From Macrostomum lignano (taxonomy: Eukaryota), in contig NIVC01002036.1 of the NCBI GenBank assembly GCA_002269645.1, positions 62,001 to 126,000 of the forward strand: a DNA stretch of 64,000 nt, in the 5' to 3' direction. Shown here one piece after another: positions 7,790-62,871 of the stretch. Below the pieces are notes generated by a model. That model saw only the letters and a list, made by a program, of their open reading frames with translations. It ran no database searches and was not told the origin of the DNA. The stretch's first letter is position 1. The number at the start of each line of letters is the position of its first letter. Both the position numbers and the translations under genes were made by a program.

Positions 7790-8380
7790 TTCTATGCTCT
7801 CTTCTCTATAGTCTCCTCTCCTCTCCTCTCCTCTCCTCTCTTCTCTATAGTCTCCTCTCCTCTCCTCTCCTCTCCTCTCCTCTCTTCTCTATAGTCTCCT
7901 CTCCTCTCCTCTCCTCTCCTCTCCTCTCCTCTCCTCTCCTCTCCTCTCCTCTCCTCTCTTCTCTATAGTCTCCTCTCCTCTCTATAGTCTCCTCTCCTCT
8001 CCTCTCCTCTCCTCTCCTCTCTTCTCCTCTCCTCTCCTCTCCTCTCCTCTCCTTTCCTCTCCTCTCCCTTTTCTCCTCTCCTCTCCCTTCTCTCCTTTCC
8101 TCTCCCTCTCTCTCCTTTTCTCTCCCTTCTCTCCTCTCCTCTCCTTTCTCTCCTCTCCTATCCCTTCTCTCCTTTCCTCTCCCTTCTCTCTTTTCCTCTC
8201 CCTTCTCTCCTCTCCTCTCCCTTCTCTCCTTTCCTCTCCCTTCTCTCCTTTCCTCTCCCTTCTCTCCTCTCCTCTCCCTTCTTTAGATCTCCTCTCCTTA
8301 CCCTTCTCTCCTCTCCTTTCCCTTCTCTCCTCTCCTCTCCCTTCTCTCCTCTCCCTTCTATCCTCTCCTCTCCCCTCTTC
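7790..8380. repeat. (CTCCT)n / CT-rich low-complexity tract
   Basis: Visible pentamer repeat degenerating to a polypyrimidine tract between convergent genes. Confidence 0.95.
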
Positions 8381-8505
8381 TCATTGTGCAGTAAGTTTTT
8401 TTGCGTCATCAATGCTGCCATCGAATATTGTGTGTGCAGTGGGCAAGGTAATCATGGCGTTGGTTACGAGTATGATCTGCAGCTGTGTTGTTGCAGTGCC
8501 ATTCT

Positions 8506-10386
8506 TCACGCGGCATTCATCGCCTTATCAGTTTCAACGCGGCATTTTGTGAACGCGATCGGTCGATAGTCAGCAATGCAGCAGCCATGGGGCGATCCGA
8601 ATTCCACTTCACCAAGTCTGGGCACGGACCGGCGCATGGTGACCCGGCTGTCATTGCTCGACTGTTTGCTTCGACGAAGTCGATCCGACAGTCGCCTGTT
8701 TAGAAAAATGGTTTGCTGCGCGAAAAATGAGCTTAAAATTTTTCGACGAAGCTCGAAGTGCTCGTGCAGCAGGCTGATCTGCTGGGTGAGCAGGGCGACG
8801 CCAAAGTTCAGGATGAAAATGCCAACAAAGAGGAACACGAGGATCTGCGGCCACAGGGTGACGTAATCGCTGATGCCGGGAAATCCGGCCAGACTGAACG
8901 CGTACCGCAGTGACCGGCCGATATATTCCACCGCGCACGTCCAGGAGTAGACGGAGCACTCGATGTACGGCTGGCTGAGCAGCATCGTGGCGCAGATCAG
9001 AGCCAAGGGCAGCACAACTAGAAATGTTAGATTCATTGCCGCGTTCATGCAGAGCAGAACGTTTAGAAACAGTTGATAAAACGTTGCCATGTCCATGATG
9101 AAGAACAGCTGCAGGGTAAACATGTAGACGTAATTTAGCATGACCACCGCCTGAAGCCGGGACCCCTCGACAAACAGCTGCCCATCGACCTCATAGTAGC
9201 TTCTTGAATCGCTGAAGAAGTTGTGCTCCTGCATTATGATGAAGGCCTGCGTCAGCATGAAAAGAAACATGAACGAATCAAAAACACCGCCGCCTCTCAA
9301 AGAAACTGCGCTCTTAAGACATTGCAGCACACCCAGGCGCTTTCGTACCAGCAGTGGCTGGCTGAGAAGTTCAAAGATTCTGGCAACCAGCCACCACAGC
9401 CAGCCTGCAACACTAAAGACCTGCAGGCCGATTCTAACGTAGAAAACATACCTGAATGCAGCAACAAGATTTGGCGACAATAACTGAATGTAAGATTGGT
9501 TAGAATTTGCACTGTCCGGGATGAGCACTTGGACCTGGGAGTCAAAAGTATCCTTTGTGAATATCCGCACAGTCAGTGTGGACAGTAGGATGGCATACAT
9601 GAGCAGGTACCAAAACAGTGCGATAAGGGACTCCCAGAGGCTAAAACCAAAGTCACCGATACTTTTAAAGAAGGCCTGGGTCACCGAGCTGTTGAAAAAG
9701 CAGATATACTTTGCAGGAATTTCTTCGGCCACGTAAATTTGAGAATATCTCAGATACTGCATGAACGGAGACTTTAGGAAGCGATCTCCACCAGAGCTGG
9801 AGTAGCGGCTGAGGTCGACCTCCTCGACCAGCAGGCTCGGGTCGGTCGGGTGCTCCCGCTCTCTGATCAGGTATCCGGGCGCATTGGCGAACGCTGTCGC
9901 CAGGTGGAAGCAGTCCCTGGCCGCCGCGTACTCCAGCGGTGTCAGGCAGTCGGCCGTCAGCTCCTCGCTCAGCAGCCGAGCGCACGCGTCCGGATGCCGG
10001 CGCGACAGTCTGGCGAAGAGCCGAGCGAGCTGCGCCTCGTCAGTCGGGCTGGCCAGGCTGGAGCAGCAAAAGTCCACCAGGAGGAACAGGGCGCAGCGGG
10101 CGCGGTCCCACAGACCGAGGCTGTCGACCAGCTCGACTGCTCGGCTGGCCAGCTCGTCGTCCCGAGCGAGCAGCACGAGGCAGAACGGCGACAGCTTGGG
10201 CTGCCGATCTGCCTCCGAGCTGTTGTCGGCGACGCCGTCGCAGAATCGGCAGTCGCTGTGCCGCAGCAGCTCCGGACGCTGCTGCAGTTCGTTGAAAAAT
10301 TTCCTATATTGTTTTGTGTACAAAATTTCCATGGCCTCTTTCACTTCTGAGGATGTGGCACTGCAGACATTCTTGATCGTTGTCAT
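8506..10386 (-). CDS. Divergent TRPV-like 6-TM ion channel, paralog A (intronless CDS, 626 aa from ATG 10386)
   Basis: Ankyrin-like TPLEYAAARDC motif followed by EVDLS (cf. TRPV TPLKLAA...YDLS), multiple hydrophobic segments, pore-helix-like SLRYAFSLAGFPG, S6-like FILNFGVALLTQQ (cf. TRPV LLLNMLIALMGET). Family assignment is by motif recognition only. Confidence 0.7.
   Translation of the reverse strand: MTTIKNVCSATSSEVKEAMEILYTKQYRKFFNELQQRPELLRHSDCRFCDGVADNSSEADRQPKLSPFCLVLLARDDELASRAVELVDSLGLWDRARCALFLLVDFCCSSLASPTDEAQLARLFARLSRRHPDACARLLSEELTADCLTPLEYAAARDCFHLATAFANAPGYLIREREHPTDPSLLVEEVDLSRYSSSGGDRFLKSPFMQYLRYSQIYVAEEIPAKYICFFNSSVTQAFFKSIGDFGFSLWESLIALFWYLLMYAILLSTLTVRIFTKDTFDSQVQVLIPDSANSNQSYIQLLSPNLVAAFRYVFYVRIGLQVFSVAGWLWWLVARIFELLSQPLLVRKRLGVLQCLKSAVSLRGGGVFDSFMFLFMLTQAFIIMQEHNFFSDSRSYYEVDGQLFVEGSRLQAVVMLNYVYMFTLQLFFIMDMATFYQLFLNVLLCMNAAMNLTFLVVLPLALICATMLLSQPYIECSVYSWTCAVEYIGRSLRYAFSLAGFPGISDYVTLWPQILVFLFVGIFILNFGVALLTQQISLLHEHFELRRKILSSFFAQQTIFLNRRLSDRLRRSKQSSNDSRVTMRRSVPRLGEVEFGSPHGCCIADYRPIAFTKCRVETDKAMNAA
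9800..10278 (-). repeat. Left arm of 479-bp inverted repeat (within channel A CDS)
   Basis: Reverse complement matches 11560-12038 at 476/479 nt by manual comparison. Confidence 0.97.
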
Positions 10387-10539
10387 GGCAGCTGGGGTTC
10401 TTCTCGGCAATCAGGCCGCTCGGGACTTTGCAAGAGGAGTTCCTGGGCTTCCACCTGCGCTCGCAGCTTTCAGTTTTGTACCCGCTGTGAGCTGAAATTA
10501 TGTAGAGTGCCGACTAGCTAATCTGCTGGCCTCATCTGT

Positions 10540-10553
10540 GTTGCCATGGGGAT
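10540..10553 (-). promoter_or_regulatory. X-box (RFX)-like motif upstream of channel A
   Basis: GTTGCCATGGGGAT (minus strand ATCCCCATGGCAAC); one perfect half-site. Confidence 0.4.
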
Positions 10554-11229
10554 GGAGCCAGATGCGATGCAGTTGAGCACTGTCAATGCTCTTAGCTTAA
10601 CTATTTGGATTGCTGATTTCTACATTAATTAGCTCAAAGCAGATAAAATCGTGACTGATAAATTCCCCAGTAATTTGCTTATTAATGGGACTGAGTCTGT
10701 TTACCAATCAAATACAGCCGCTGTCAGTTTATTGTAACGCGAGCATTTGGGTAACAGCAAAGTACCTGGTAATAAAGCAGAACCGATCGGAGGGGTAGAG
10801 TGTGCAACTAGGATGGAGGTTGAGTGGTGCTTACCGTGCATGTCAAATATTAGAATTTAGGGCCAGAATCAGGCAGTAAAGGCGTCCGACTCTCTCAGAG
10901 TGTGCGGACTCAGTGCTGAACACTGCTGGCCTCCTCGCTGGCTGCAGATCCGCCGTCGCTTCGATTTTGCGGCAGCGCCCAAAGACTCCATGCTAGGGGT
11001 GTTCGGGACGGGTTAACCCCGAGCCCGGTACCCCTACCCGAACCCCGAACCCCGACCCGGTTGAACAAGAATTACTTCTGACAAATGTATCGGTCCTGTT
11101 CCTTTGAGTAATTAGATTACGATATACAATACAATGGAAACAAAAGTCATTTGCCCGGCTGTCAATTTACCTGTCAATGGCAACATCAAAGTTGACAACA
11201 GCATAATTCAGCTAATAAAGTAGATCTGC

Positions 11230-11243
11230 ATCTCTATGGCAAC
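11230..11243 (+). promoter_or_regulatory. X-box (RFX)-like motif upstream of channel B
   Basis: ATCTCTATGGCAAC, about 185 bp before ATG 11428. Confidence 0.5.
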
Positions 11244-11427
11244 CAGAGTTAGTGAATGGCTAGGAATGAGCCATAATTAATGTTGGAGCTTCCGGTCGAT
11301 AACAATGCAGGCAATCTGATTGCATGGACGTCAATTAAATAATGAGTATCTTGAGCATTCGACAAAGCCTGCGCAGCAGAACTCAGCCCCAAAAACAGCA
11401 CCAAAGCCAAAGCAACTCGACATCAAA

Positions 11428-13275
11428 ATGTATTGGAGAGTTGAAGCAATCGAGGAAGTCGGTCACGAGTCCAAAAACCTACCAAAGATGTCAAAAGATC
11501 CAGACATGGTACTTCTGTACTCCGGACAATATCCGAAGTTCGCTGAAGCTCTCAAACACCGTCCGGAGCTGCTGCGGCACAGCGACTGCCGATTCTGCGA
11601 CGGCGTCACCGACGACAGCTCGGAGGCAGATCGGCAGCCCAAGCTGTCGCCGTTCTGCCTCGTGCTGCTCGCTCGGGACGACGAGCTGGCCAGCCGAGCA
11701 GTCGAGCTGGTCGACAGCCTCGGTCTGTGGGACCGCGCCCGCTGCGCCCTGTTCCTCCTGGTGGACTTTTGCTGCTCCAGCCTGGCCAGCCCGACTGACG
11801 AGGCGCAGCTCGCTCGGCTCTTCGCCAGACTGTCGCGCCGGCATCCGGACGCGTGCGCTCGGCTGCTGAGCGAGGAGCTGACGGCCGACTGCCTGACACC
11901 GCTGGAGTACGCGGCGGCCAGGGACTGCTTCCACCTGGCGACAGCGTTCGCCAATGCGCCCGGATACCTGATCAGAGAGCTGGAGCACCCGACCGACCCG
12001 AGCCTGCTGGTCGAGGAGGTCGACCTCAGCCGCTACTCGCACTCATTGAGCGGCAGTCGGTACAACAAGTCGCCATTCATCCAGCTCATCAAGTTTGCGC
12101 AACCTCTGTTAGGAGACACGCTGCAGCCAGGGTTTTTCTGCTTCTTCAGCAGCCCCGTTGCTGCCGCATATTTTCGCAGCTCCTCGAATCTGATGCCAAG
12201 CGGCTACACGGCTGTCATATCGCTCGTATTCTTCACATTTCTGCTGTTCAGCGTCCTGTCCACCTTGATGGTCCGCATCTTCACACGGGACACCTTCAAT
12301 GCCACTGAGCAGGTGCTGCTGCCGGTGCAGTTTAACTACAGCCTGTTCTACCTGAGCGCTGTCCCACCTGACACTCTGCTTGCCTTTCGCTACGTGTATT
12401 ACGCCCGATTTGTCATTCAAAGCCTCAGCGTTCTGTTTTGGTGTGCTTGGTTTGGCGCCATTGTGACTAACAATAACAGCCTGCCGAAGTCGCTGCAGGT
12501 CAACAGGTTCCCCCTGCAGTTGCTGGCTGGCGCGCTCAGCATGAAGAAGTACTTACTGGAGGGCATCGTCAGCATCTTTCTGCTGTGCCAGCTGCTGCTA
12601 GTCGGCTTGGAGGTGATTTTCTTCTCCGACAAGAGCAGCTATTACCAAGTTGACGGTCGCTGGTACGTGGATACTTCAAGGCTGATGCTATTCTTCATTG
12701 TGAACACTTCGTTCATGATGTTGATAATGGTGATGTTCCTGTGCAAATTGTCCTGCTGCAATCTGACAATTTTCTACCTGCTTTACTGCATGAACTCTTC
12801 AACTAAGCTGTTGCTACTAGTTGGGCTACCGCTGCTCCTGGTTGGGCTCACAATGCTGCTCACCCAGCCCTACCTGCTGTGCGAGCACAACTCCTGGTCC
12901 TGCGCTATCGAATACGTCGGTCGAACGTTTCGCTACACGTTCAGCCTGAGCCAGTTTCCCGGCTACAGCGACTACCTGGTGCTGTGGCCGCAGGCTCTCG
13001 TCTACCTGTGCATTGTGGTATTCCTGCTCAACTTTGGCATTGCCCTGCTCACCCAGCAGATCACGCTGCTGCAGGAAGACGTTCAGTTTCGACAGGCCGT
13101 GCTGGCCAACTACTTCGTGGCGCAGTACGCCACCGTCATCTGGCGATTTAAGCGGCACTTTGGCCTGAGAACGGCGCAAGGCGGGGCGAGCGACTTCGTG
13201 GCGCGCAGCGTTCGAACTCGGGTTTCAGGAAAGAATGGGACGGCGCGGAGCCACTGCTGCTGCCTGAAGAACTGA
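11428..13275 (+). CDS. Divergent TRPV-like 6-TM ion channel, paralog B (intronless CDS, 615 aa from first in-frame ATG)
   Basis: Colinear homolog of paralog A: TPLEYAAARDC, TM segments, TFRYTFSLSQFPG, FLLNFGIALLTQQ. Confidence 0.7.
   Translation: MYWRVEAIEEVGHESKNLPKMSKDPDMVLLYSGQYPKFAEALKHRPELLRHSDCRFCDGVTDDSSEADRQPKLSPFCLVLLARDDELASRAVELVDSLGLWDRARCALFLLVDFCCSSLASPTDEAQLARLFARLSRRHPDACARLLSEELTADCLTPLEYAAARDCFHLATAFANAPGYLIRELEHPTDPSLLVEEVDLSRYSHSLSGSRYNKSPFIQLIKFAQPLLGDTLQPGFFCFFSSPVAAAYFRSSSNLMPSGYTAVISLVFFTFLLFSVLSTLMVRIFTRDTFNATEQVLLPVQFNYSLFYLSAVPPDTLLAFRYVYYARFVIQSLSVLFWCAWFGAIVTNNNSLPKSLQVNRFPLQLLAGALSMKKYLLEGIVSIFLLCQLLLVGLEVIFFSDKSSYYQVDGRWYVDTSRLMLFFIVNTSFMMLIMVMFLCKLSCCNLTIFYLLYCMNSSTKLLLLVGLPLLLVGLTMLLTQPYLLCEHNSWSCAIEYVGRTFRYTFSLSQFPGYSDYLVLWPQALVYLCIVVFLLNFGIALLTQQITLLQEDVQFRQAVLANYFVAQYATVIWRFKRHFGLRTAQGGASDFVARSVRTRVSGKNGTARSHCCCLKN
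11560..12038 (+). repeat. Right arm of 479-bp inverted repeat (within channel B CDS)
   Basis: Matches 9800-10278 inverted; mismatches at 11608, 11614, 11981. Confidence 0.97.
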
Positions 13276-14082
13276 GTTTCAAAGTTCCAAGGTTGCTGCG
13301 GGTTTGCGGAGTTTTATTCATCTTTTACTTTCCAAAGACTGCTCAAGTAGAAGGACGGGAAACGATGTTTCTTGGAAAAACTGTAGGAGGCAGGTTTTAC
13401 CGAAAAAATACATTACGGAGATTGGAAGCTTTTTTTCTCAGCACAAAAACTGATAGCTACTGCTTTTGATAGGAGGAAGACCCAATGTTTATCATTTGAT
13501 ATGCTGTGTCTTGCCTTTCTTACAGCTCTATCGATATTCATAAAGCTTTTCGTTTAGAAAATTTATATTTTCTGTGTTAATTTTATATCCTACGTACCAA
13601 TGGCTGAGCAACGAAATGTGTAGCAGAATGATAAAACAGATTCATAAAACCATATATGAGTCCAGTTGTACCGTTTTTGATATTTTAGGCACAGGAAATT
13701 TGCGTGACCTTCTCAAACGATTAACAGCCAGAAGCCGAGTCTCGAAGGCACTTCGTTTCTTTAAATCTGTAAGTGAGTATCTATCATCACACCTGACTCT
13801 TTGATTTCTTGATGACTGTTTTTGGCGCCAGCGAATTTCGAAGAGAGGTTTACTACAGTTTTGTTTAAATATACCATGGAGCTGAAGTCGAAACCAAGCT
13901 ATTTATAGATTTGAACAGAATATTCCAACTATCGATGGAACACCTGCCATAGACATGAGATCTATTGGAATCCATTCAAACTGCCGAACCAGAGCGTTCA
14001 AGTCAGGCGGAACTCATCGGTTTTTGCATCTCAGATGCTTCTAGTTGTCGAGCAAAACCAGCTGCTTGGTGAAACTCTAACG

Positions 14083-14367
14083 ATGTCGGAGCCGCTGCCC
14101 AGCTTCCTATCCGAATGGGATCTGGCCGAGATGAAGGAGGCCTTCTCCATGCTGGACAACACGGGCACGCTGCGAATCCCGGCCAGCATGTTAGTCAACG
14201 CGGCACTGCAGGTGGCCGAGTGTCCGGACCCGAAGCAGGTGTTCCAGCATGTGCAACAGACGCGGCTGTCGCCGCAGGGCAGCATCGATTTCAACAAATT
14301 TGTCGGCTTCATGTGCGGCATGGTGCCGTACGAGCGACCAAGAGATCGCCTCATCAGCTGTCTCAAG
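14083..14367 (+). CDS. Calmodulin/myosin-light-chain-like N-lobe exon 1a
   Basis: MSEPLPSFLSEWDLAEMKEAFSMLDNTG...GSIDFNKFV...RDRLISCLK, phase-0 donor GTTAGA at 14368. Confidence 0.75.
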
Positions 14368-14687
14368 GTTAGAGTGAGAAATGCTTTGTCCAATCAGTGA
14401 ATGGCTGATGCACCGTTTCATTTAGTCACGTGGGGACATTCCAATACAGCACGCACACACTTATGCACTTCTTTCGAGGACCACTAGCAACATATTAATT
14501 AAAACGCTACACTCCACGAGCGAATATTTTTTAATACTAATTACCTGGAAAAAATATACTGCGGAGATAGGAAACAACCAATGATTGCATTCAAGGGCGT
14601 CGCCATGGATTTTATGGTGGGGGGGGACAAAGCCAAGAATTCAACATGTACATGTACATGACTAAATTCTGGCACTCCTTTTAGCGC

Positions 14688-15070
14688 CGCAGGCACTCAT
14701 TTTAGCGCAGCAGGCACTCATTTTAGCGCCGCAGGCACTCATTTTAGCGCAGCAGGCACTCATTTTAGCGCCGCAGGCACTCATTTTAGCGCAGCAGGCA
14801 CTCCTTTTAGCGCAGCAGGCACTCATTTTAGCGCCGCAGGCACTCATTTTAGCGCCGCAGGCACTCATTTTAGCGCCACAGGCACTCATTTTAGCGCCGC
14901 AGGAACTCATTTTAGCGCCGCAGGCACTCATTTTAGCGCCGCAGACATTCCTTTTAGCGCAGCAGGCACTCATTTTAGCGCAACAGGCACTCATTTTAGC
15001 GCCGCAGGCATTCATTCTAGCGCAACGGGCGCTCATTTTAGCGCCGCAGGCACTCATTTCAGCGCCGAAA
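14688..15070. repeat. 21-bp minisatellite
   Basis: GCAGGCACTCATTTTAGCGCC in tandem. Confidence 0.95.
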
Positions 15071-21204: not shown

Positions 21205-23428
21205 TCAACGCAGAGTAGAAGAAGCGCAAACGCAGCCGCAGGCGGCCGGGCATTCCAGCCGGCCAGCCCGGAACCAGGAGCGCAGGTGGTCCGGGTGGCC
21301 GCCATGGCCGCACGCCAGGCACACCAGCAGGAGGCCGCTGGTTGGCCGCCAGCAGATCGAGCAGGCGATGCGGAAGCCGCTGCTGGCGGCGGCCAATGAG
21401 CGGCAGGAGTCGCAGGGACCGCGGCGGCCGCAGCGATGGCAGGCCAGCTGCAGTTGAACATGAGGCGGCGGGTGATGCGGCTGCGGCTGCGGCTGACTGG
21501 CCGGGGAAATGGACGCGGGGTCCAAGTCCACGCTGAACACCCACTGCTTGAGCAGCTGCGCCCGGGCTTCGTGCAGGCCCCAGCTGTACAGCAGGCTGGA
21601 GTACCGCGTCAGGTGACTGTTGATGAGGCGGGCCAGGCGGCTGTTCAGCAGCCTGCGGCGGTGGGGATGGTGGGATTATTGGAGGGTGTGGGATTATTGT
21701 AGGGTGTGGGATTTATGGAGGGTGTGGGATTTATGGAGGGTGTGGGATTATTGGAGGGTGTGGGATTATTGTAGGGTGTGGGATTTATGAAGGGTGTGGG
21801 ATTTATGGAGGGTGTGGGATTATTGGAGGGTGTGGGATTATTGTAGGGTGTGGGATTTATGGAGGGTGTGGGATTTATGGAGGGTGTGGGATTATTGGAG
21901 GGTGTGGGATTATTGTAGGGTGTGGGATTTTTGGAGGATGTGGGATTTATGGAGGGTGTGGGAATTATTGTAGGGTGTGGGGTTATTGTAGGGTGTGTGA
22001 TTTATGGAGTGTGTGTGATTTATGGAGGGTGTGGGATTATTGTAGGGTGTGTGATTTATGGAGTGTGTGTGATTTATGGAGGGTGTGGGATTATTGGAGG
22101 GTGTGGGATTTATGGAGGGTGTGGGATTTATGGAGGGTGTGGGATTTATGGAGGGTGTGGGATTATTGGAGGGTGTGGGTTTATTGTAGGGTGTGTGATT
22201 TATGGAGGGTGTGTGATTTATGGAGGGTGTGGGATTATTGTAGGGTGTGTGATTTATGGAGGGTGTGGGATTATTGTAGGGTGTGGGGTTATTGGAGGGT
22301 GTGGAATTATTGTAGGGTGTGTGATTTATGGAGGGTGTGGGATTATTGCAGGGTGTGTGATTTATGGAGGGTGTGGGATTATTGCAGGGTGTGGGGTTAT
22401 TGGAGGGTGTGGAATTATTGTAGGGTGTGTGATTTATGGAGGGTGTGGGATTATTGCAGGGTGTGGGGTTATTGGAGGGTGTGGAATTACTGGAGGGTGT
22501 GGGATTATTGGAGGGTGTGGGATTTATGGAGGGTGTGGGAATTATTGTAGGGTGTGGGGTTATTGTAGGGTGTGTGATTTATGGAGGGTGTGGGAATTAT
22601 TGTAGGGTGTGGGGTTATTGTAGGGTGTGTGATTTATGGAGGGTGTGGGATTATTGTAGGATGTGTGATTTATGGAGGGTGTGTGATTTATGGAGGGTGT
22701 GGGATTATTGCAGGGTGTGGGGTAACTGCAGGGTGCGGGATTATTTAGGGCGTATGATTATTTTAGGGCGTATGATTATTTTAGGGCGTAGGATTTTTTA
22801 GGGTGTGGGATCACTGTAGTGTGGGGTCACTGCAGTGTGTGGTCACTGTATAGGGTGTGGGATCACTGCAGTGTGCGGTCACTGTATAGGGTGTGGGATA
22901 ATGGGATTACAATCAGTAAGGCACTCAAACCTGGAGTGCTCAAAGTGCCGCATGATGGTGTCGCTCTCTAGACTAGCAGGAGGTTCAACCGGGGTTCGCA
23001 CATCATTGTCGGAGACGGACTTGACCCGCGATGACTGCTGGTTCAAGCGGGCGATGGAGGCTGAAGCGGTCAGATTTTTGCGAGAAGATTTAATTTCAAC
23101 CGGTATTGCACATTGAACTATTTTCGAAACATGGCTACTGAAAATAGCCTGTCAGTAGTGTGTTTAGGAAAGTACCGTAATAATTTATAGTTTAAAGATA
23201 ATAAAAAAGCGCCCACCAATCTGCGCTGATGGCGACTGATTCTGGCATTTTTCAGAGGCAGAGGCAAAAAACAGGAAATAACAAGTAGCGCGAGCGCAGC
23301 AGCATACCGGTAGCTCGAGATCACAGACCAGCTGAGATTGACACGGATTAACAGACAGACAGCCAGATAGACAGACAAACAGACAGAGAGACGGACAGAC
23401 AGGGACAGATAGAGAGAGAAAGACAGAA

Positions 23429-23459
<31 letters not shown>

Positions 23460-23466
23460 GACGACG

Positions 23467-23498
<32 letters not shown>

Positions 23499-23501
23499 AA
23501 G

Positions 23502-23533
<32 letters not shown>

Positions 23534-23562
23534 AGATAGACGACAGAGACAGAGAGACGGAC

Positions 23563-23616
<54 letters not shown>

Positions 23617-23637
23617 GACAAAGACAGAGAGACGGAC

Positions 23638-23678
<41 letters not shown>

Positions 23679-23723
23679 AGGACAGACAGACAGATAGACA
23701 GACAGAAAGACAGACAGACAGAC

Positions 23724-23764
<41 letters not shown>

Positions 23765-23815
23765 TAGACAGACAGAAAGACAGACAGACAGACAGACAGA
23801 GACAGAGAGACGGAC

Positions 23816-23872
<57 letters not shown>

Positions 23873-23891
23873 GACAGAGAGACGGACAGAG

Positions 23892-23936
<45 letters not shown>

Positions 23937-23955
23937 GACAGAGAGACGGACAGAG

Positions 23956-23996
<41 letters not shown>

Positions 23997-24015
23997 GACA
24001 GAGAGACGGACAGAG

Positions 24016-24077
<62 letters not shown>

Positions 24078-24098
24078 GACAGAGACAGAGAGACGGAC

Positions 24099-24140
<42 letters not shown>

Positions 24141-24161
24141 GACAGAGACAGAGAGACGGAC

Positions 24162-24211
<50 letters not shown>

Positions 24212-24236
24212 GACAGAGACAGAGAGACGGACAGAG

Positions 24237-24277
<41 letters not shown>

Positions 24278-24310
24278 TAGACAGACAGAAAGACAGACAG
24301 ACAGACAGAG

Positions 24311-24367
<57 letters not shown>

Positions 24368-24418
24368 TAGACAGACAGAAAGACAGACAGACAGACAGAC
24401 AGAGACAGAGAGACGGAC

Positions 24419-24461
<43 letters not shown>

Positions 24462-24518
24462 CCAGGACAGACAGACACTAGGACAGACAGACAGACAGAC
24501 AGACAGACAGAGACAGAG

Positions 24519-24557
<39 letters not shown>

Positions 24558-24576
24558 GACAGAGAGACGGACAGAG

Positions 24577-24637
<61 letters not shown>

Positions 24638-24638
24638 G

Positions 24639-24678
<40 letters not shown>

Positions 24679-24699
24679 GACAGAGACAGAGAGACGGAC

Positions 24700-24749
<50 letters not shown>

Positions 24750-24856
24750 GACAGAGACAGAGAGACGGACAGAGACAGACAGACAGACAGACAGACATAC
24801 AGACAGACAGACAGACAGACAGACAGATAGACAGACAGAAAGACAGACAGACAGAC

Positions 24857-24917
<61 letters not shown>

Positions 24918-24968
24918 TAGACAGACAGAAAGACAGACAGACAGACAGACAGAGACAGAGAGACGGAC

Positions 24969-25013
<45 letters not shown>

Positions 25014-25032
25014 GACAGAGAGACGGACAGAG

Positions 25033-25085
<53 letters not shown>

Positions 25086-25104
25086 GACAGAGAGACGGAC
25101 AGAG

Positions 25105-25145
<41 letters not shown>

Positions 25146-25164
25146 GACAGAGAGACGGACAGAG

Positions 25165-25222
<58 letters not shown>

Positions 25223-25243
25223 GACAGAGACAAAGAGACGGAC

Positions 25244-25289
<46 letters not shown>

Positions 25290-25330
25290 GACAGAGACAG
25301 AGAGACGGACAGAGACAGACAGACAGACAG

Positions 25331-25411
<81 letters not shown>

Positions 25412-25462
25412 TAGACAGACAGAAAGACAGACAGACAGACAGACAGAGACAGAGAGACGGAC

Positions 25463-25493
<31 letters not shown>

Positions 25494-25582
25494 CTAGGAC
25501 AGACAGACACTAGGACAGACAGACACTAGGACAGACAGACACTAGGACAGACAGACAGACAGACAGACAGACAGAGACAGAG

Positions 25583-25629
<47 letters not shown>

Positions 25630-25648
25630 GACAGAGAGACGGACAGAG

Positions 25649-25713
<65 letters not shown>

Positions 25714-25732
25714 GACAGAGAGACGGACAGAG

Positions 25733-25785
<53 letters not shown>

Positions 25786-25804
25786 GACAGAGAGACGGAC
25801 AGAG

Positions 25805-25845
<41 letters not shown>

Positions 25846-25907
25846 GACAGAGAGACGGACAGAGACAGACGGACAGACAGACAGACGACAGAGACAGAGA
25901 GACGGAC

Positions 25908-25953
<46 letters not shown>

Positions 25954-25994
25954 GACAGAGACAGAGAGACGGACAGAGACAGACAGACAGACAG

Positions 25995-26067
<73 letters not shown>

Positions 26068-26118
26068 TAGACAGACAGAAAGACAGACAGACAGACAGAC
26101 AGAGACAGAGAGACGGAC

Positions 26119-26149
<31 letters not shown>

Positions 26150-26238
26150 CTAGGACAGACAGACACTAGGACAGACAGACACTAGGACAGACAGACACTA
26201 GGACAGACAGACAGACAGACAGACAGACAGAGACAGAG

Positions 26239-26285
<47 letters not shown>

Positions 26286-26304
26286 GACAGAGAGACGGAC
26301 AGAG

Positions 26305-26357
<53 letters not shown>

Positions 26358-26376
26358 GACAGAGAGACGGACAGAG

Positions 26377-26417
<41 letters not shown>

Positions 26418-26436
26418 GACAGAGAGACGGACAGAG

Positions 26437-26490
<54 letters not shown>

Positions 26491-26511
26491 GACAGAGACA
26501 GAGAGACGGAC

Positions 26512-26557
<46 letters not shown>

Positions 26558-26614
26558 GACAGAGACAGAGAGACGGACAGAGACAGACAGACAGACAGAC
26601 AGACGGACAGACAG

Positions 26615-26685
<71 letters not shown>

Positions 26686-26726
26686 CACAGACAGACAGAC
26701 AGACAGACAGACACACAGACAGACAC

Positions 26727-26757
<31 letters not shown>

Positions 26758-26862
26758 CTAGGACAGACAGACACTAGGACAGACAGACACTAGGACAGAC
26801 AGACACTAGGACAGACAGACACTAGGACAGACAGACAGACAGACAGACAGACAGAGACAGAG

Positions 26863-26901
<39 letters not shown>

Positions 26902-26916
26902 GACAGAGAGACGGAC

Positions 26917-26989
<73 letters not shown>

Positions 26990-27008
26990 GACAGAGAGAC
27001 GGACAGAG

Positions 27009-27061
<53 letters not shown>

Positions 27062-27080
27062 GACAGAGAGACGGACAGAG

Positions 27081-27121
<41 letters not shown>

Positions 27122-27183
27122 GACAGAGAGACGGACAGAGACAGACGGACAGACAGACAGACGACAGAGACAGAGAGACGGAC

Positions 27184-27229
<46 letters not shown>

Positions 27230-27270
27230 GACAGAGACAGAGAGACGGACAGAGACAGACAGACAGACAG

Positions 27271-27339
<69 letters not shown>

Positions 27340-27390
27340 TAGACAGACAGAAAGACAGACAGACAGACAGACAGAGACAGAGAGACGGAC

Positions 27391-27421
<31 letters not shown>

Positions 27422-27510
27422 CTAGGACAGACAGACACTAGGACAGACAGACACTAGGACAGACAGACACTAGGACAGACAGACAGACAGACAGACAGAC
27501 AGAGACAGAG

Positions 27511-27557
<47 letters not shown>

Positions 27558-27576
27558 GACAGAGAGACGGACAGAG

Positions 27577-27621
<45 letters not shown>

Positions 27622-27640
27622 GACAGAGAGACGGACAGAG

Positions 27641-27681
<41 letters not shown>

Positions 27682-27700
27682 GACAGAGAGACGGACAGAG

Positions 27701-27754
<54 letters not shown>

Positions 27755-27775
27755 GACAGAGACAGAGAGACGGAC

Positions 27776-27821
<46 letters not shown>

Positions 27822-27862
27822 GACAGAGACAGAGAGACGGACAGAGACAGACAGACAGACAG

Positions 27863-27947
<85 letters not shown>

Positions 27948-28000
27948 TAGACAGACAGAAAGACAGACAGACAGACAGACAGAGACAGAGAGACGGACGG

Positions 28001-28033
<33 letters not shown>

Positions 28034-28122
28034 CTAGGACAGACAGACACTAGGACAGACAGACACTAGGACAGACAGACACTAGGACAGACAGACAGAC
28101 AGACAGACAGACAGAGACAGAG

Positions 28123-28169
<47 letters not shown>

Positions 28170-28188
28170 GACAGAGAGACGGACAGAG

Positions 28189-28249
<61 letters not shown>

Positions 28250-28268
28250 GACAGAGAGACGGACAGAG

Positions 28269-28333
<65 letters not shown>

Positions 28334-28384
28334 TAGACAGACAGAAAGACAGACAGACAGACAGACAGAGACAGAGAGACGGAC

Positions 28385-28415
<31 letters not shown>

Positions 28416-28520
28416 CTAGGACAGACAGACACTAGGACAGACAGACACTAGGACAGACAGACACTAGGACAGACAGACACTAGGACAGACAGACAGACAG
28501 ACAGACAGACAGAGACAGAG

Positions 28521-28559
<39 letters not shown>

Positions 28560-28574
28560 GACAGAGAGACGGAC

Positions 28575-28639
<65 letters not shown>

Positions 28640-28658
28640 GACAGAGAGACGGACAGAG

Positions 28659-28711
<53 letters not shown>

Positions 28712-28730
28712 GACAGAGAGACGGACAGAG

Positions 28731-28771
<41 letters not shown>

Positions 28772-28833
28772 GACAGAGAGACGGACAGAGACAGACGGAC
28801 AGACAGACAGACGACAGAGACAGAGAGACGGAC

Positions 28834-28875
<42 letters not shown>

Positions 28876-28916
28876 GACAGAGACAGAGAGACGGACAGAG
28901 ACAGACAGACAGACAG

Positions 28917-28993
<77 letters not shown>

Positions 28994-29044
28994 TAGACAG
29001 ACAGAAAGACAGACAGACAGACAGACAGAGACAGAGAGACGGAC

Positions 29045-29079
<35 letters not shown>

Positions 29080-29168
29080 CTAGGACAGACAGACACTAGG
29101 ACAGACAGACACTAGGACAGACAGACACTAGGACAGACAGACAGACAGACAGACAGACAGAGACAGAG

Positions 29169-29215
<47 letters not shown>

Positions 29216-29234
29216 GACAGAGAGACGGACAGAG

Positions 29235-29279
<45 letters not shown>

Positions 29280-29298
29280 GACAGAGAGACGGACAGAG

Positions 29299-29339
<41 letters not shown>

Positions 29340-29358
29340 GACAGAGAGACGGACAGAG

Positions 29359-29407
<49 letters not shown>

Positions 29408-29433
29408 TAGACGACAGAGACAGAGAGACGGAC

Positions 29434-29479
<46 letters not shown>

Positions 29480-29520
29480 GACAGAGACAGAGAGACGGAC
29501 AGAGACAGACAGACAGACAG

Positions 29521-29605
<85 letters not shown>

Positions 29606-29658
29606 TAGACAGACAGAAAGACAGACAGACAGACAGACAGAGACAGAGAGACGGACGG

Positions 29659-29691
<33 letters not shown>

Positions 29692-29780
29692 CTAGGACAG
29701 ACAGACACTAGGACAGACAGACACTAGGACAGACAGACACTAGGACAGACAGACAGACAGACAGACAGACAGAGACAGAG

Positions 29781-29827
<47 letters not shown>

Positions 29828-29846
29828 GACAGAGAGACGGACAGAG

Positions 29847-29907
<61 letters not shown>

Positions 29908-29928
29908 GACAGAGACAGAGAGACGGAC

Positions 29929-29997
<69 letters not shown>

Positions 29998-32900
29998 GAG
30001 ACGGACAGAGACAGAGAGAGACAATTTAAGGCTAATGCTTGGGCAATTCGGGCACAGCACCGAAGGATGCAGACACGCACTCAGCTAACAGTGCACACCA
30101 ACTTACCCACGCTGCAATCTGTGACAGTCTTATTTATGACAGGGAGGGAAGGCGGTGAAAATGCGGGCAAAATATTGATAGTAGTGCAAGTACGAAGAAT
30201 ACGAGCTATATAAAGCAGCGTATAAATGTGAAGTTTTGGTTAGTCAGACAACACAAAATCATGCGATTAAAAGCGAGTGTCACGAGATAGGAAACTTAAA
30301 AGCAGTCAGTAGATACTACTCGCAGATCTAACTAGTGCGGCAATTTTTTAACATAATAAAAATCATTTTTTAACACAACAGGAACTGGCACTCTGTTTAC
30401 TCTATTTGTGTCGCTTTTCAGTTTGAAGGCCAAGGTTAGCATTGGGATTAAGGCTACCATTCTTGGTGGAGATTAGGGGCGATTGTTGGTGGAGATTAGG
30501 GGCGATTGTTGGTGGAGATTATGGGCGATTGTTGGTGGAGATTAGGGGCGATTGTTGGTGGAGATTATGGGCGATTGTTTGTGGAGATTAGGGGCGATTG
30601 TTTGTGGAGATTAGGGGCGATTGTTGGTGGAGATTATGGGCGATTGTTGGTGGAGATTAGGGGCGATTGTTGGTGCAGATTAGGGGCGATTCTTGGCGGA
30701 GATTAGGAGCGATTGTTTGTGGAGATTAGGGGAGATTGTTGGCGGAGATTAGGGGCGATTGTTGGTGGAGATTAGGGGAGATTGTTGGCGGAGATTAGGG
30801 GCGATTGTTGGTGGAGATTAGGGGAGATTGTTGGCGGAGATTAGGAGCGATTGTTTGTGGAGATTAGGGGCGATTGTTGGTGGAGATTAGGGGCGATTGT
30901 TGGTGGAGATTAGGGGAGATTGTTGGCGGAGATTAGGGGCGATTGTTGGTGGAGATTAGGGGAGATTGTTGGCGGAGATTAGGAGCGATTGTTTGTGGAG
31001 ATTAGGGGCGATTGTTGGTGGAGATTAGGGGCGATTGTTGGTGGAGATTAGGGGAGATTGTTGGCGGAGATTAGGGGCGATTGTTGGTGGAGATTAGGGG
31101 AGATTGTTGGCGGAGATTAGGAGCGATTGTTTGTGGAGATTAGGGGCGATTGTTGGTGGAGATTAGGGGCGATTGTTGGTGGAGATTAGGGGAGATTGTT
31201 GGCGGAGATTAGGAGCGATTGTTTGTGGAGATTAGGGGCGATTGTTGGTGGAGATTAGGGGCGATTGTTGGCGGAGATTAGGGGCGATTGTTTGTGGAGA
31301 TTAGGGGCGATTCCTAATGCAGATAGGAGAGCGCAGAGACTGAAGTTTAATAACTTTATGACAGCTCAAGACGCCTGATAAATTCTAACCGGAAATTGGT
31401 GCAGCAGCTCAAAGCTCAGCGATTAGGAACAGAAAGAAAAATGAAACAATTTGAGTCTCTCCGACAGACCCAGAGCCTGCCAGCCAGATCTGCATAGCAA
31501 CAGAACTGACGCCAACCTACCCAGGTTTGACTTGGCCGCCAGAGCGGCAGGCATGGTCTGATAGTGGTCCGGGTGCTGCAATAATATTTAGCATTAACTG
31601 GCTATTGAAGTTAGCGGGACCCGGCTTACACTTCTTACAGTAAGCGGTAGTGCAGTTGAAGCAATCAGCTATATAAATATGAGAATCATTAAATTTTAAT
31701 GACAAAGTGCAATAATTTTCTGAAGCTATAAAATTGAAGCCGTGTCAGAATCAGCGCTGGTTAATATTTCATCCATAAATCACGATTGGAAGTCCGCTAA
31801 AGACGGAGTATTGATCCGAAAATCGATTGAATCAATTGTAGCAGGTAAAATTTGGGCGGCAGGGTTAGAATGGCCTGACACTGGGCAAACTCACCGATTC
31901 GAGGCGAGGGCTGACTCAGCAGCGTTGGCGTGAATTTGAGATCATTGCACAAAAAATAGAAAAAAACATCTTATCATGTCGCTAATTTTCATGTGTAATT
32001 TTAGGCCTAATACGCATTTGTTTCTACTATTAACGATTATCAGTAGGCTGAAACGAACATTGCTACCGGAATTAAATGTTAATAAGTAAAAATGCTCTGA
32101 ATTAAATCGCATAAGCACGGGTTGCCACGCACACAAACTGCCGCTAAGCACAATCACCGATGTGCCATTGGGCGACTCCAAGGTAGTCAGACTGGCGGCC
32201 GGGGGGTGCAAGTTCAAGTTGAACGATATTTGCCGCTGCTTCCGCTGGATAATTGGAATCGCCTGCGCCAGCAACCAGCCGAATTATAAATATGCGCACG
32301 GTATAATAACTATCGATACATATCGGCAAAGTTGATGTTAAATTGTGAGACAAAGTTTCAAATGATTTTGAAATGATATTCTAGATGATTTTGAGATGAT
32401 ATTCCAAAAGATTTTGAGATGATATTCCAGATGATTTTGAGATGATATTCCAGATGATTTTGAGATGATATTTCAGATGATTTTGAGATGATATTCCAGA
32501 TGATTTTGAGATGATATTCCAGATGATTTTGAGATGATATTCCAGATGATTTTGAGATGATATTCCAGATGATTTTGAGATGCACCAGCAGTAACTGTTT
32601 CAGGCATTATCGATGCAATTCCCCAGATAACTCGCAGGCAATCCTTGCTCAAGATGCCCAACTTACCAGGCCTTCGCCATCGTCAATGGCAGCGCCGGAA
32701 GCCGCGGTGTTGCTGGACAGTGTCCGGCCGCCCAGACCGGACACCTGCTGGTAGCTGCCAGCCGACTGTTCCAGAACCTGCAGCGAGCTGATGGACGTCT
32801 GCGATTGGAAATGCTGCGGCTGTTGCTGCTTCTGCTTGAGCACGGCCAGCTGCTTCTGGAAGGAGTCGCACCAGCGGGAGTGCAGAGCTGACAGGTAGTA

Positions 32901-45026: not shown

Positions 45027-45039
45027 GTTGCCTGGCAAC
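45027..45039. promoter_or_regulatory. X-box (RFX)-like palindrome
   Basis: GTTGCCTGGCAAC at the edge of the CpG-retaining block. Confidence 0.45.
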
Positions 45040-62843: not shown

Positions 62844-62871
62844 CACACTACACTAAACAGCCAAGCAAGCG

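What the first reader, a model, noticed from the sequence alone, without database searches (positions are those of the whole stretch)
9800..12038. Head-to-head channel paralogs share a 479-bp, 99.4% identical in-frame block while the rest is deeply diverged
Seen: 9800-10278 is the reverse complement of 11560-12038 with only 3 mismatches (A/T, N/D, R/L), all amino-acid-changing and none synonymous. The block runs from RPELLRH to DLSRYS (about 160 codons, the ankyrin-like cytosolic domain). Immediately outside it the proteins are only moderately similar and synonymous sites differ heavily (e.g. the pore region). Inference: recent or ongoing arm-to-arm gene conversion in a palindrome keeps a shared assembly/ligand domain identical while the TM and pore domains diversify, as would suit a heteromeric sensory channel pair.
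Basis: partly seen in the sequence, partly recalled or inferred. Interest (0 to 1): 0.8.

Follow-up and report, generated by a model that had tools for sequence, protein, structure and literature searches.

The report
Gene-conversion tract in flatworm membrane-protein paralogs
Two neighbouring, oppositely oriented and otherwise very different copies of a flatworm-only membrane-protein gene share a 479-base stretch that one recently copied from the other, which is an ordinary process (gene conversion) seen here in an unstudied gene family.

Summary
Window 9800-10278 is the reverse complement of 11560-12038 with 3 mismatches in 479 nt. It lies in frame in two head-to-head intronless ORFs, p1 (8506-10386, minus strand) and p2 (11428-13275, plus strand). 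Outside the block the two are saturated at synonymous sites (pS about 0.7) and about 41% identical in protein.

The window is Macrostomum lignano assembly Mlig_3_7, contig NIVC01002036.1:62001-126000.

Non-allelic gene conversion is well supported:
- pS is 0.009 inside the block and 0.71 outside.
- The longest identical run is 366 nt, against at most 30 nt in 2000 permutations.
- Quartet topology flips from (p1,p2)|(p3,p4) in the block to (p1,p3)|(p2,p4) in the membrane body, each 1000/1000 bootstraps.
- pN/pS inside the block is no lower than outside.

- A third paralog on other contigs (P0001) shares a nested 401-nt sub-tract at 95% identity with the same 3' end, so this is not only palindrome arm-to-arm exchange.
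- A fourth paralog (P0085) has a normally diverged block, so the domain is not intrinsically ultraconserved.
- No Pfam, PDB or fold evidence supports "ankyrin".
- "Channel" rests only on six hydrophobic segments and non-significant Foldseek hits to TRP channels.

This is a known mechanism in an orphan family, of modest interest.

The parts
8506..10386 (-). p1: intronless ORF of 626 codons counted from the first ATG (the frame is open from 10410). It is a member of an orphan Macrostomum family of predicted six-pass membrane proteins. It is not annotated in the NCBI or UniProt M. lignano proteomes.
   Evidence: ORF. 54% amino-acid identity to p2 and 60% to P0001. Exact look-ups found nothing on record. 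Only P0001 was found in 5.8 billion proteins.
11428..13275 (+). p2: intronless ORF of 615 codons counted from the first ATG (the frame is open from 11320), head-to-head with p1. Not annotated.
9800..10278 (-). Converted tract, copy in p1. It covers 160 codons (RPELLRH to DLSRYS) and encodes most of the N-terminal cytosolic all-helical domain.
   Evidence: 476/479 identical to the other copy. pS is 0.00-0.04 per 30-codon window.
11560..12038 (+). Converted tract, copy in p2.
11638..12038 (+). Older nested sub-tract that is also shared with the third paralog P0001 (p3, on L001-L003) at 95% nucleotide identity. The equivalent in p1 is 9800-10200. It has the same 3' end as the p1/p2 tract but starts 26 codons further in (PKLSPF).
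   Evidence: blastn gives 95.0% over 401 nt, window 11638-12038 against L001 10241-10641. pS is 0.067-0.076 in this core against 0.71 outside it. Codon listing.
10279..11559 (.). Spacer between the two tract copies. It holds the diverged 5' coding ends of both genes (10279-10386 and 11428-11559) and the 1041-nt shared upstream region (10387-11427), presumably a divergent promoter region.
   Evidence: Sequence read. Identity between the two sides is at chance level beyond 10333/11505. No Rfam match. The promoter function is inferred, not tested.
8788..9624 (-). p1 membrane body: six hydrophobic segments (residues about 255-533) with a loop of about 40 residues between the fifth and sixth. It is not homogenised with p2.
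   Evidence: Kyte-Doolittle scan. pS 0.5-1.0 and pN 0.26-0.61 against p2.
12214..13050 (+). p2 membrane body (residues about 263-541), not homogenised.

Best explanation
The block is a non-allelic (interlocus) gene-conversion tract: a non-reciprocal, homology-directed copying of one gene's sequence into its paralog during DNA repair.

The genes belong to a four-member, Macrostomum-restricted family of predicted six-pass membrane proteins. I call them p1, p2, p3 (P0001) and p4 (P0085).

At least two events are needed. An older one homogenised about 400 nt (codons PKLSPF to DLSRYS) between p3 and the p1/p2 locus, and about 5% divergence has accumulated since. A recent one copied 479 nt (RPELLRH to DLSRYS) between the adjacent inverted genes p1 and p2, leaving 0.6% divergence. 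That is less than the 3-4% synonymous divergence between this contig and its homeologous contig.

The shared 3' border lies at the junction between the N-terminal helical domain and an indel-rich linker. I infer that the tract persists as a self-reinforcing island of homology. Once the flanks had diverged beyond what recombination can use, later events could only start and end inside the island, and each event reset its divergence.

What is shown: the tract, its borders, the synonymous-site contrast, the topology conflict, and the absence of extra protein-level constraint.

What is inferred: the repair mechanism, the order and direction of the events, and the reason for the borders.
For: 1. 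Synonymous-site contrast. In the core (134 codons) pS is 0.009 for p1-p2, 0.067 for p1-p3 and 0.076 for p2-p3. In the next 360 codons it is 0.71-0.72.

2. Run length. The longest identical run is 366 nt, against a permutation maximum of 30 nt.

3. Phylogenetic conflict. The quartet is (p1,p2)|(p3,p4) in the core and (p1,p3)|(p2,p4) in the membrane body. Each holds in 1000/1000 bootstraps, on codon positions 1+2 and on all positions.

4. Constraint does not explain it. pN/pS in the core is 0.57-0.61 against p3, compared with 0.39-0.56 outside. The fourth paralog in the same genome has 52% amino-acid identity and pS 0.57-0.60 in the core.

5. No embedded RNA family. The open antisense frame is what a GC3 of 0.88 predicts, because stop codons in the codon-aligned antisense frame need sense codons that end in A (my reasoning).

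6. Independent sequence. The same block-limited similarity is seen against p3 on three separate contigs. The phenomenon therefore does not depend on how this one contig was assembled.

7. The tract length (about 0.4-0.5 kb) and the separation of the inverted copies (1.3 kb) fit what is generally known of conversion between close paralogs (my own knowledge).
Against: - Only one genome and one assembly were available. There are no orthologs, no population data and no raw reads. 'Ongoing' conversion and the age of the events therefore rest on divergence alone.
- The high GC3 of the tract (0.88, against 0.63-0.75 downstream) looked like GC-biased conversion. The unconverted p4 has the same GC3 (0.88) in this domain, so that argument fails.
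- Direction of transfer is unresolved.
- The 'island of homology' reason for the shared 3' border is an inference. Selection against converting the membrane body would give the same pattern.
- Mlig_3_7 is known to contain chimeric scaffolds and to have heavy multi-mapping of reads (PMC10733133). Polishing could have exaggerated the last few percent of identity between p1 and p2.
Confidence: 0.8

Rival explanations
1. Conversion happens, but the tract is kept identical by selection because the N-terminal domain mediates co-assembly or ligand binding in a heteromeric channel made of p1, p2 (and p3), while the membrane and pore parts diversify.
For: The tract coincides with one structural unit, the N-terminal helical domain, and ends at the linker before the first hydrophobic segment. 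Three paralogs share it. The divergent head-to-head arrangement would allow co-expression (inference). N-terminal domains drive assembly in many tetrameric cation channels (my own knowledge).
Against: There is no sign of stronger constraint in the tract: pN/pS is about 0.6 against p3, and all three p1/p2 differences are replacements. p4 carries a 52%-identical version of the domain. Channel identity itself is unproven. p1 and p2 are not even annotated as genes, and no expression data are available.
Confidence: 0.12
2. Assembly or consensus artefact. The identical block arose from read mis-assignment or polishing between similar copies in a difficult neopolyploid assembly.
For: 93% of read pairs multi-map in Mlig_3_7, and 36% of the assembly length lies in chimeric scaffolds (PMC10733133).
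Against: Polishing cannot turn about 50%-identical sequence into 99.4%-identical sequence with codon-exact borders. Three mismatches remain. A fold-back artefact would make the whole arms identical, and they are not. The same tract borders recur against p3 on three independent contigs.
Confidence: 0.04
3. Extreme conservation of a functional DNA or RNA element or of the protein domain, with no conversion: for example an overlapping antisense gene, a structured RNA or a small-RNA target.
For: An antisense frame is open across the block in p1, p2 and p3.
Against: p4 in the same genome is saturated in this block (pS 0.57-0.60). pN/pS is not reduced. There is no Rfam match. The open antisense frame follows from GC3 of 0.88. 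The topology conflict cannot come from constraint alone.
Confidence: 0.02
4. Reciprocal exchange rather than conversion. Crossing-over within the inverted copies flips the 1.28-kb spacer and swaps promoters and 5' coding ends between the two gene bodies, and the block is the recombination substrate and product.
For: 479 nt of 99.4% identity in inverted orientation is a competent substrate. Because the block is in the same frame in both genes, either orientation of the spacer leaves two intact ORFs (inference).
Against: A crossover does not by itself create identity, so conversion or a very recent duplication is still needed. The pre-block 19 codons give no signal of swapped ancestry (0.54-0.60 identity in all three pairs; my count). 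No second haplotype or homeolog could be read.
Confidence: 0.02

Closest known systems
Interlocus gene conversion between closely spaced inverted paralogs, for example the head-to-head Drosophila Hsp70Aa/Ab pair (my own knowledge), and partial-gene conversion tracts in Caenorhabditis and mammalian paralogs (PMC3966223 and PMC2720389, listed; I saw only the titles and abstract openings, not the full papers)
   Same: Short physical distance and inverted orientation. A contiguous tract with synonymous sites homogenised. Discordant phylogenies inside and outside the tract.
   Different: Here the partners are ancient paralogs that are saturated at synonymous sites everywhere else. The tract covers only about 25% of the coding sequence and coincides with one domain. 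A nested older tract with the same 3' border is shared with a third, dispersed paralog.
Arm-to-arm conversion in large palindromes, such as the human Y-chromosome ampliconic palindromes (my own knowledge)
   Same: Inverted copies a short spacer apart that exchange sequence non-reciprocally.
   Different: True palindromes have arms that are near-identical along their whole length (kilobases to megabases), including non-coding DNA. Here only 479 nt are identical, and the rest of the 'arms' are about 51% identical.
TRP-type six-transmembrane cation channels
   Same: Six hydrophobic segments. A loop of about 40 residues between the fifth and sixth. A cytosolic N-terminal helical domain. A length of about 620-650 residues. 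The best Foldseek hits are TRPV1, TRPC1/4, TRPM8 and polycystin-2.
   Different: No Pfam or PDB sequence match even at E=10. The fold hits are not significant and come from a model with pLDDT 41. I saw no TRP-box motif after the last segment when reading the alignment.

Membership tests
Interlocus gene-conversion tract | A contiguous segment far more similar than its flanks, beyond chance | tested here: met
   476/479 identical, against about 51% identity in the flanks. Longest identical run 366 nt, against a maximum of 30 nt in 2000 permutations.
Interlocus gene-conversion tract | Synonymous sites are homogenised, not only the protein | tested here: met
   pS is 0.009 (p1-p2) and 0.067-0.076 (against p3) in the core, and 0.71 outside.
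Interlocus gene-conversion tract | The phylogeny of the tract conflicts with the phylogeny of the flanks | tested here: met
   (p1,p2)|(p3,p4) in the core against (p1,p3)|(p2,p4) in the body, each 1000/1000 bootstraps.
Interlocus gene-conversion tract | Similarity is not explained by stronger purifying selection on that segment | tested here: met
   pN/pS is about 0.6 in the core and 0.4-0.56 outside. p4 has 52% amino-acid identity and pS 0.57-0.60 in the core.
Interlocus gene-conversion tract | Across related species the tract clusters by species or locus while the flanks cluster by paralog | not testable with these tools
   No other Macrostomum genome or proteome member was found. The homeologous contig NIVC01000907.1 could only be read 10 kb around an annotated gene.
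Interlocus gene-conversion tract | The tract is real in the DNA and not an assembly product | tested here: inconclusive
   No reads were available. Indirect support comes from the three retained mismatches, the diverged flanks, and the same borders against p3 on three independent contigs.
GC-biased gene conversion signature | GC3 is raised specifically in converted copies | tested here: not met
   GC3 in the core is 0.87-0.89 in p1-p3, but also 0.88 in the unconverted p4.
Large palindrome with arm-to-arm conversion | The inverted arms are near-identical along their whole length, including non-coding flanks | tested here: not met
   Identity is at chance level beyond 9800/12038 and beyond 10333/11505. 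The gene bodies are 51% identical in nucleotides.
Ankyrin-repeat domain | A match to ankyrin profiles or to the ankyrin fold | tested here: not met
   No Pfam hit at E<=10 for any of the four proteins. The domain model (pLDDT 57) is all-helical, and its Foldseek hits are generic helical repeats with E>=0.5 and no ankyrin.
TRP / six-transmembrane P-loop cation channel | Six transmembrane segments with a re-entrant loop between the fifth and sixth | tested here: inconclusive
   Six hydrophobic segments and a loop of about 40 residues were found by hydropathy. The re-entrant pore helix and selectivity filter were not established.
TRP / six-transmembrane P-loop cation channel | Sequence-profile membership (Pfam ion-channel families or a solved homolog) | tested here: not met
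   Pfam found none. PDB profile searches found none at E<=10 apart from one spurious N-terminal hit. Exhaustive HMMER against 1.84 billion representatives found only family members.
TRP / six-transmembrane P-loop cation channel | Fold similarity to solved channels | tested here: inconclusive
   About 45 of the top 50 Foldseek hits are TRP channels or polycystins, but at E 0.1-2 and TM 0.10-0.17, from a model with pLDDT 41.

The most novel reading that the evidence does not exclude
The tract is not just a by-product of recombination. It is a selectively maintained common N-terminal module that lets otherwise anciently diverged subunits (p1, p2, p3) co-assemble into heteromeric channels. In addition, its inverted, in-frame position in the head-to-head pair allows occasional homologous inversion of the 1.28-kb spacer. 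Such an inversion would swap promoters and leader peptides between the two channel bodies while leaving both reading frames intact.
Probability: 0.1. Interest if true: 0.6.

Novelty: new member of a known kind. Interest (0 to 1): 0.3.

Why it matters
This is a clean textbook-quality example of domain-limited concerted evolution. Paralogs that are saturated at synonymous sites still exchange one 0.4-0.5-kb segment, with nested tracts that share a border.

For Macrostomum lignano genomics it has three practical consequences:
- It flags two intact, unannotated genes.
- It warns that trees built from the N-terminal part of this family will be wrong.
- It adds a case of non-allelic exchange in a neopolyploid genome where copy discrimination is already difficult.

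It does not open a new mechanism. The functional reading (a heteromeric sensory channel) remains speculation until the family is shown to be a channel and to be expressed.

Tried and rejected
1. GC-biased conversion. The block has GC3 of 0.88 against 0.63-0.75 downstream. I rejected this as evidence because the unconverted paralog p4 has the same GC3 in this domain.

2. Exon-boundary explanation for the tract borders. p4 has four GT-AG introns (after residue 64, in codon 167, in codon 351, after residue 484). The tract's 3' border aligns inside p4 exon 3, and one p4 intron falls in the middle of the block. Only the 5' border of the p3 sub-tract lies within about 6 codons of a p4 intron position. 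Rejected as an explanation.

3. Antisense overlapping gene. The antisense frame is open in p1-p3, but this is expected from the codon composition. Rejected.

4. Embedded RNA. There is no Rfam match at E<=1 in 8000-14500.

5. Family assignment. Pfam, PDB sequence and profile searches, exhaustive HMMER and two AlphaFold models with Foldseek gave nothing significant.

6. More relatives.
- The metagenome scan found none.
- The word-indexed search with an N-terminal alignment returned only the p4 fragment and even missed P0001, so its negatives are weak.
- Literature searches for the locus tags, and for gene conversion or TRP channels in M. lignano, found nothing on this family.

7. Reaching the homeologous p1/p2 pair. 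This failed because look-ups need an exact annotated protein and give only 10 kb of flank.

8. The three-out-of-three non-synonymous differences. This is not significant (P about 0.4 under neutrality).

9. Direction of transfer. An unrooted quartet and symmetric distances (p1-p3 0.043, p2-p3 0.048) do not resolve it.

Full report
**1. The observation**

Window 9800-10278 and the reverse complement of 11560-12038 differ at 3 of 479 positions. The repeat finder reports the same inverted pair, extended to 534 nt at 95%. The block sits in frame in two long ORFs that face away from each other:
- p1, 8506-10410 on the minus strand, with its first ATG at 10386.
- p2, 11320-13275 on the plus strand, with its first ATG at 11428.

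The block covers 160 codons, from RPELLRH to DLSRYS. On the 3' side in gene orientation, identity falls from 100% to chance level within a few bases. On the 5' side it falls after a short moderately similar stretch. The three differences are all replacements (A/T, N/D, R/L). About three quarters of sites are non-synonymous, so this has a probability of about 0.4 under neutrality and means nothing. The longest identical run (366 nt) exceeds every one of 2000 codon-position-preserving permutations, whose maximum was 30 nt.

**2. Where the window comes from**

A cyclin-dependent-kinase exon at 57626-58303 is identical to a Macrostomum lignano protein. Locus L006 is contig NIVC01002036.1 of assembly GCA_002269645.1 (Mlig_3_7). 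It matches window 45691-64000 at 100% over 18,310 nt. The window is therefore NIVC01002036.1:62001-126000.

A second contig, NIVC01000907.1 (L004), is collinear at 90-93% identity with many indels. Its pS against the window is 0.03-0.044 in the two neighbouring genes. This fits the published picture of three homeologous subgenomes in this neopolyploid (PMC10733133), although it is somewhat more diverged than the about 2% SNP rate reported there.

The window is packed with mini- and microsatellites.

**3. The gene family**

p1 and p2 are 54% identical overall. A search of 5.8 billion proteins found one relative, P0001 (M. lignano BOX15_Mlig004730g1, 639 residues). An exhaustive HMMER scan of 1.84 billion cluster representatives found only P0001 and a fragment, P0002. 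A cluster look-up showed that fragment to belong to P0085 (BOX15_Mlig006035g7, 646 residues). The family therefore has four known members, all from M. lignano.

- **p3 (P0001)** is intronless. It lies alone between a CUB-domain gene and an ADAM-type metalloprotease gene, on three contigs.
- **p4 (P0085)** lies on NIVC01000092.1 and has five exons with four GT-AG introns.
- **p1 and p2** are not in the NCBI or UniProt proteomes under any start codon that I tried. Both ORFs are intact, and their long-term pN/pS against each other is about 0.56. I therefore treat them as unannotated genes rather than pseudogenes.

**4. What the proteins are**

- No Pfam family matches any member at E<=10, apart from two chance-level hits.
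- Profile searches of all PDB sequences found nothing meaningful.
- Hydropathy gives six hydrophobic segments, with a loop of about 40 residues between the fifth and sixth.
- A full-length AlphaFold model is poor (pLDDT 41). Its Foldseek hits are almost all TRP channels and polycystins, but at E of 0.1 or worse and TM-scores of 0.10-0.17. This is a lead, not a result.
- The N-terminal domain modelled alone (pLDDT 57) is all-helical. It hits only generic helical repeats and no ankyrin.

So 'channel' is plausible but unproven, and 'ankyrin-like' failed the tests available.

**5. Evidence for conversion**

Nei-Gojobori counts in 30-codon windows give pS of 0.00-0.04 between p1 and p2 inside the block and 0.5-1.0 outside.

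*The third paralog.* p3, which lies on other contigs, is 95% identical in DNA to both p1 and p2 over 401 nt (window 11638-12038). In this core pS is 0.067-0.076, against 0.71 in the following 360 codons. This sub-tract ends at the same 3' codons as the p1/p2 tract but begins 26 codons later, at PKLSPF. In those 26 codons p1 equals p2, while p3 is saturated (pS 0.68).

*The fourth paralog.* p4 is normally diverged in the core (52% amino-acid identity, pS 0.57-0.60) and in the body (38-42% identity).

*Topology.* Quartet analysis with bootstrap gives (p1,p2)|(p3,p4) for the core and (p1,p3)|(p2,p4) for the membrane body. Each holds in 1000 of 1000 replicates, with or without third codon positions.

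*Constraint.* pN/pS in the core against p3 is about 0.6, no lower than outside.

Together these results exclude constraint as the cause. They show a mosaic history: at least one older exchange involving p3, and a recent one between the adjacent inverted genes.

**6. Checks that weakened or removed supporting arguments**

- *GC-biased conversion.* The block is GC-rich (GC3 0.88, against 0.63-0.75 downstream). I first read this as a footprint of biased conversion, but p4 has the same GC3 in this domain, so it is a property of the domain.
- *Exon boundaries.* The tract borders do not coincide with p4 intron positions, so an exon-boundary explanation fails.
- *Antisense gene.* The open antisense frame across the block follows from the rarity of sense codons that end in A.
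- *Embedded RNA.* No Rfam family matches the region.

**7. Mechanism and borders**

The most likely mechanism is homology-directed repair of a break in one copy using the other as template. It would be favoured by the 1.3-kb distance between the inverted copies, and in inverted orientation it carries no risk of deletion.

The common 3' border lies where the helical domain meets a linker that differs by indels among the paralogs. I infer that the tract is a self-maintaining island. Flanks too diverged for strand invasion or branch migration confine every new event to the island, and each event resets its divergence. Selection against homogenising the membrane body would give the same picture, and I cannot separate the two.

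The p1/p2 event (0.6% divergence) looks younger than the split between this contig and its homeolog (pS 0.03-0.044). The p3 event (pS about 0.07) looks somewhat older. These are rough orderings only.

**8. Artefact**

A fold-back artefact would make the whole arms identical, and they are not. Polishing cannot create a codon-exact 479-nt identity out of about 50%-identical sequence. The same borders recur against p3 on three independent contigs. Polishing could still have removed a few true differences between p1 and p2, given the heavy multi-mapping reported for this assembly. Only long reads can settle this.

**9. Comparison with the known, and verdict**

This is interlocus gene conversion between paralogs, a well-known process. 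Closely spaced inverted pairs are a classic setting for it.

It is not a palindrome of the Y-chromosome kind, because only a quarter of each gene is shared.

Two things are mildly unusual. The background is extreme (synonymous saturation everywhere else), and the tracts are nested with a shared border across three loci.

The adaptive reading, a common assembly domain for a heteromeric sensory channel, is not excluded but has no support in the data. I rate the finding as a new member of a known kind, with modest interest.

Noticed in passing
L001-L003, positions 9887-12270 (p3 locus on NIVC01001640.1, NIVC01001641.1 and NIVC01001776.1): The three subgenome copies of p3 have 0-1 differences in the 1920-nt coding sequence, and only one variable site in about 2.4 kb. 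The flanks immediately outside differ by 1.0-4.7%. Neighbouring genes of the window show pS of 0.03-0.044 between homeologs, so 13-18 synonymous differences would be expected here. This suggests homeolog-to-homeolog homogenisation of this gene as well.
   Followed up: partly
window 8506-10386 (minus strand) and 11428-13275 (plus strand): Both intact ORFs of about 620 codons are absent from the NCBI annotation of this very assembly and from UniProt M. lignano proteomes. They are probably missed genes, possibly with low or cell-type-restricted expression.
   Followed up: partly
L005 10001-14921 (p4, BOX15_Mlig006035g7): p4 has four canonical introns, whereas p1, p2 and p3 are intronless. In the membrane body p2 is slightly closer to p4 than to p1 or p3 (0.379 against 0.41). 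Either the intronless state arose more than once, or evolutionary rates differ between lineages. A retrogene origin of the intronless copies is possible.
   Followed up: partly
window 14035-14400 (plus strand): A 121-codon ORF 760 nt downstream of p2 has a weak EF-hand pair match (PF13499, E=0.0044, below Pfam's cut-off). It is not on record as a gene. A calcium-binding neighbour of a putative cation channel could be coincidence.
   Followed up: partly
window 23351-30009: A 6.6-kb (ACAG)n microsatellite with AT skew near 1. In addition there are more than 20 separate minisatellite arrays (periods 11-44 nt) across the window, including 7812-8382 directly downstream of p1 and 14671-15067.
   Followed up: no
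window 38000-50000: An AT-rich block (GC 0.27-0.41) sits between GC-richer gene regions. Part of it (45384-46103) matches the homeologous contig at 83%. Its nature is unknown.
   Followed up: no
window 52894-54110 against L004/L006: A 27-nt minisatellite (about 45 copies) lies inside the span of the SWIM/ZZ/RING-finger gene model. It differs in length between the homeologous contigs.
   Followed up: no
window 11686-11706 / 11782-11802 (and 10036-10056 / 10132-10152): Inside the block, a 21-nt direct repeat at 76% identity is spaced 96 nt (32 codons) apart, giving LASRAVE against LASPTDE. This may hint at an internal 32-residue helical repeat, or it may be chance.
   Followed up: no
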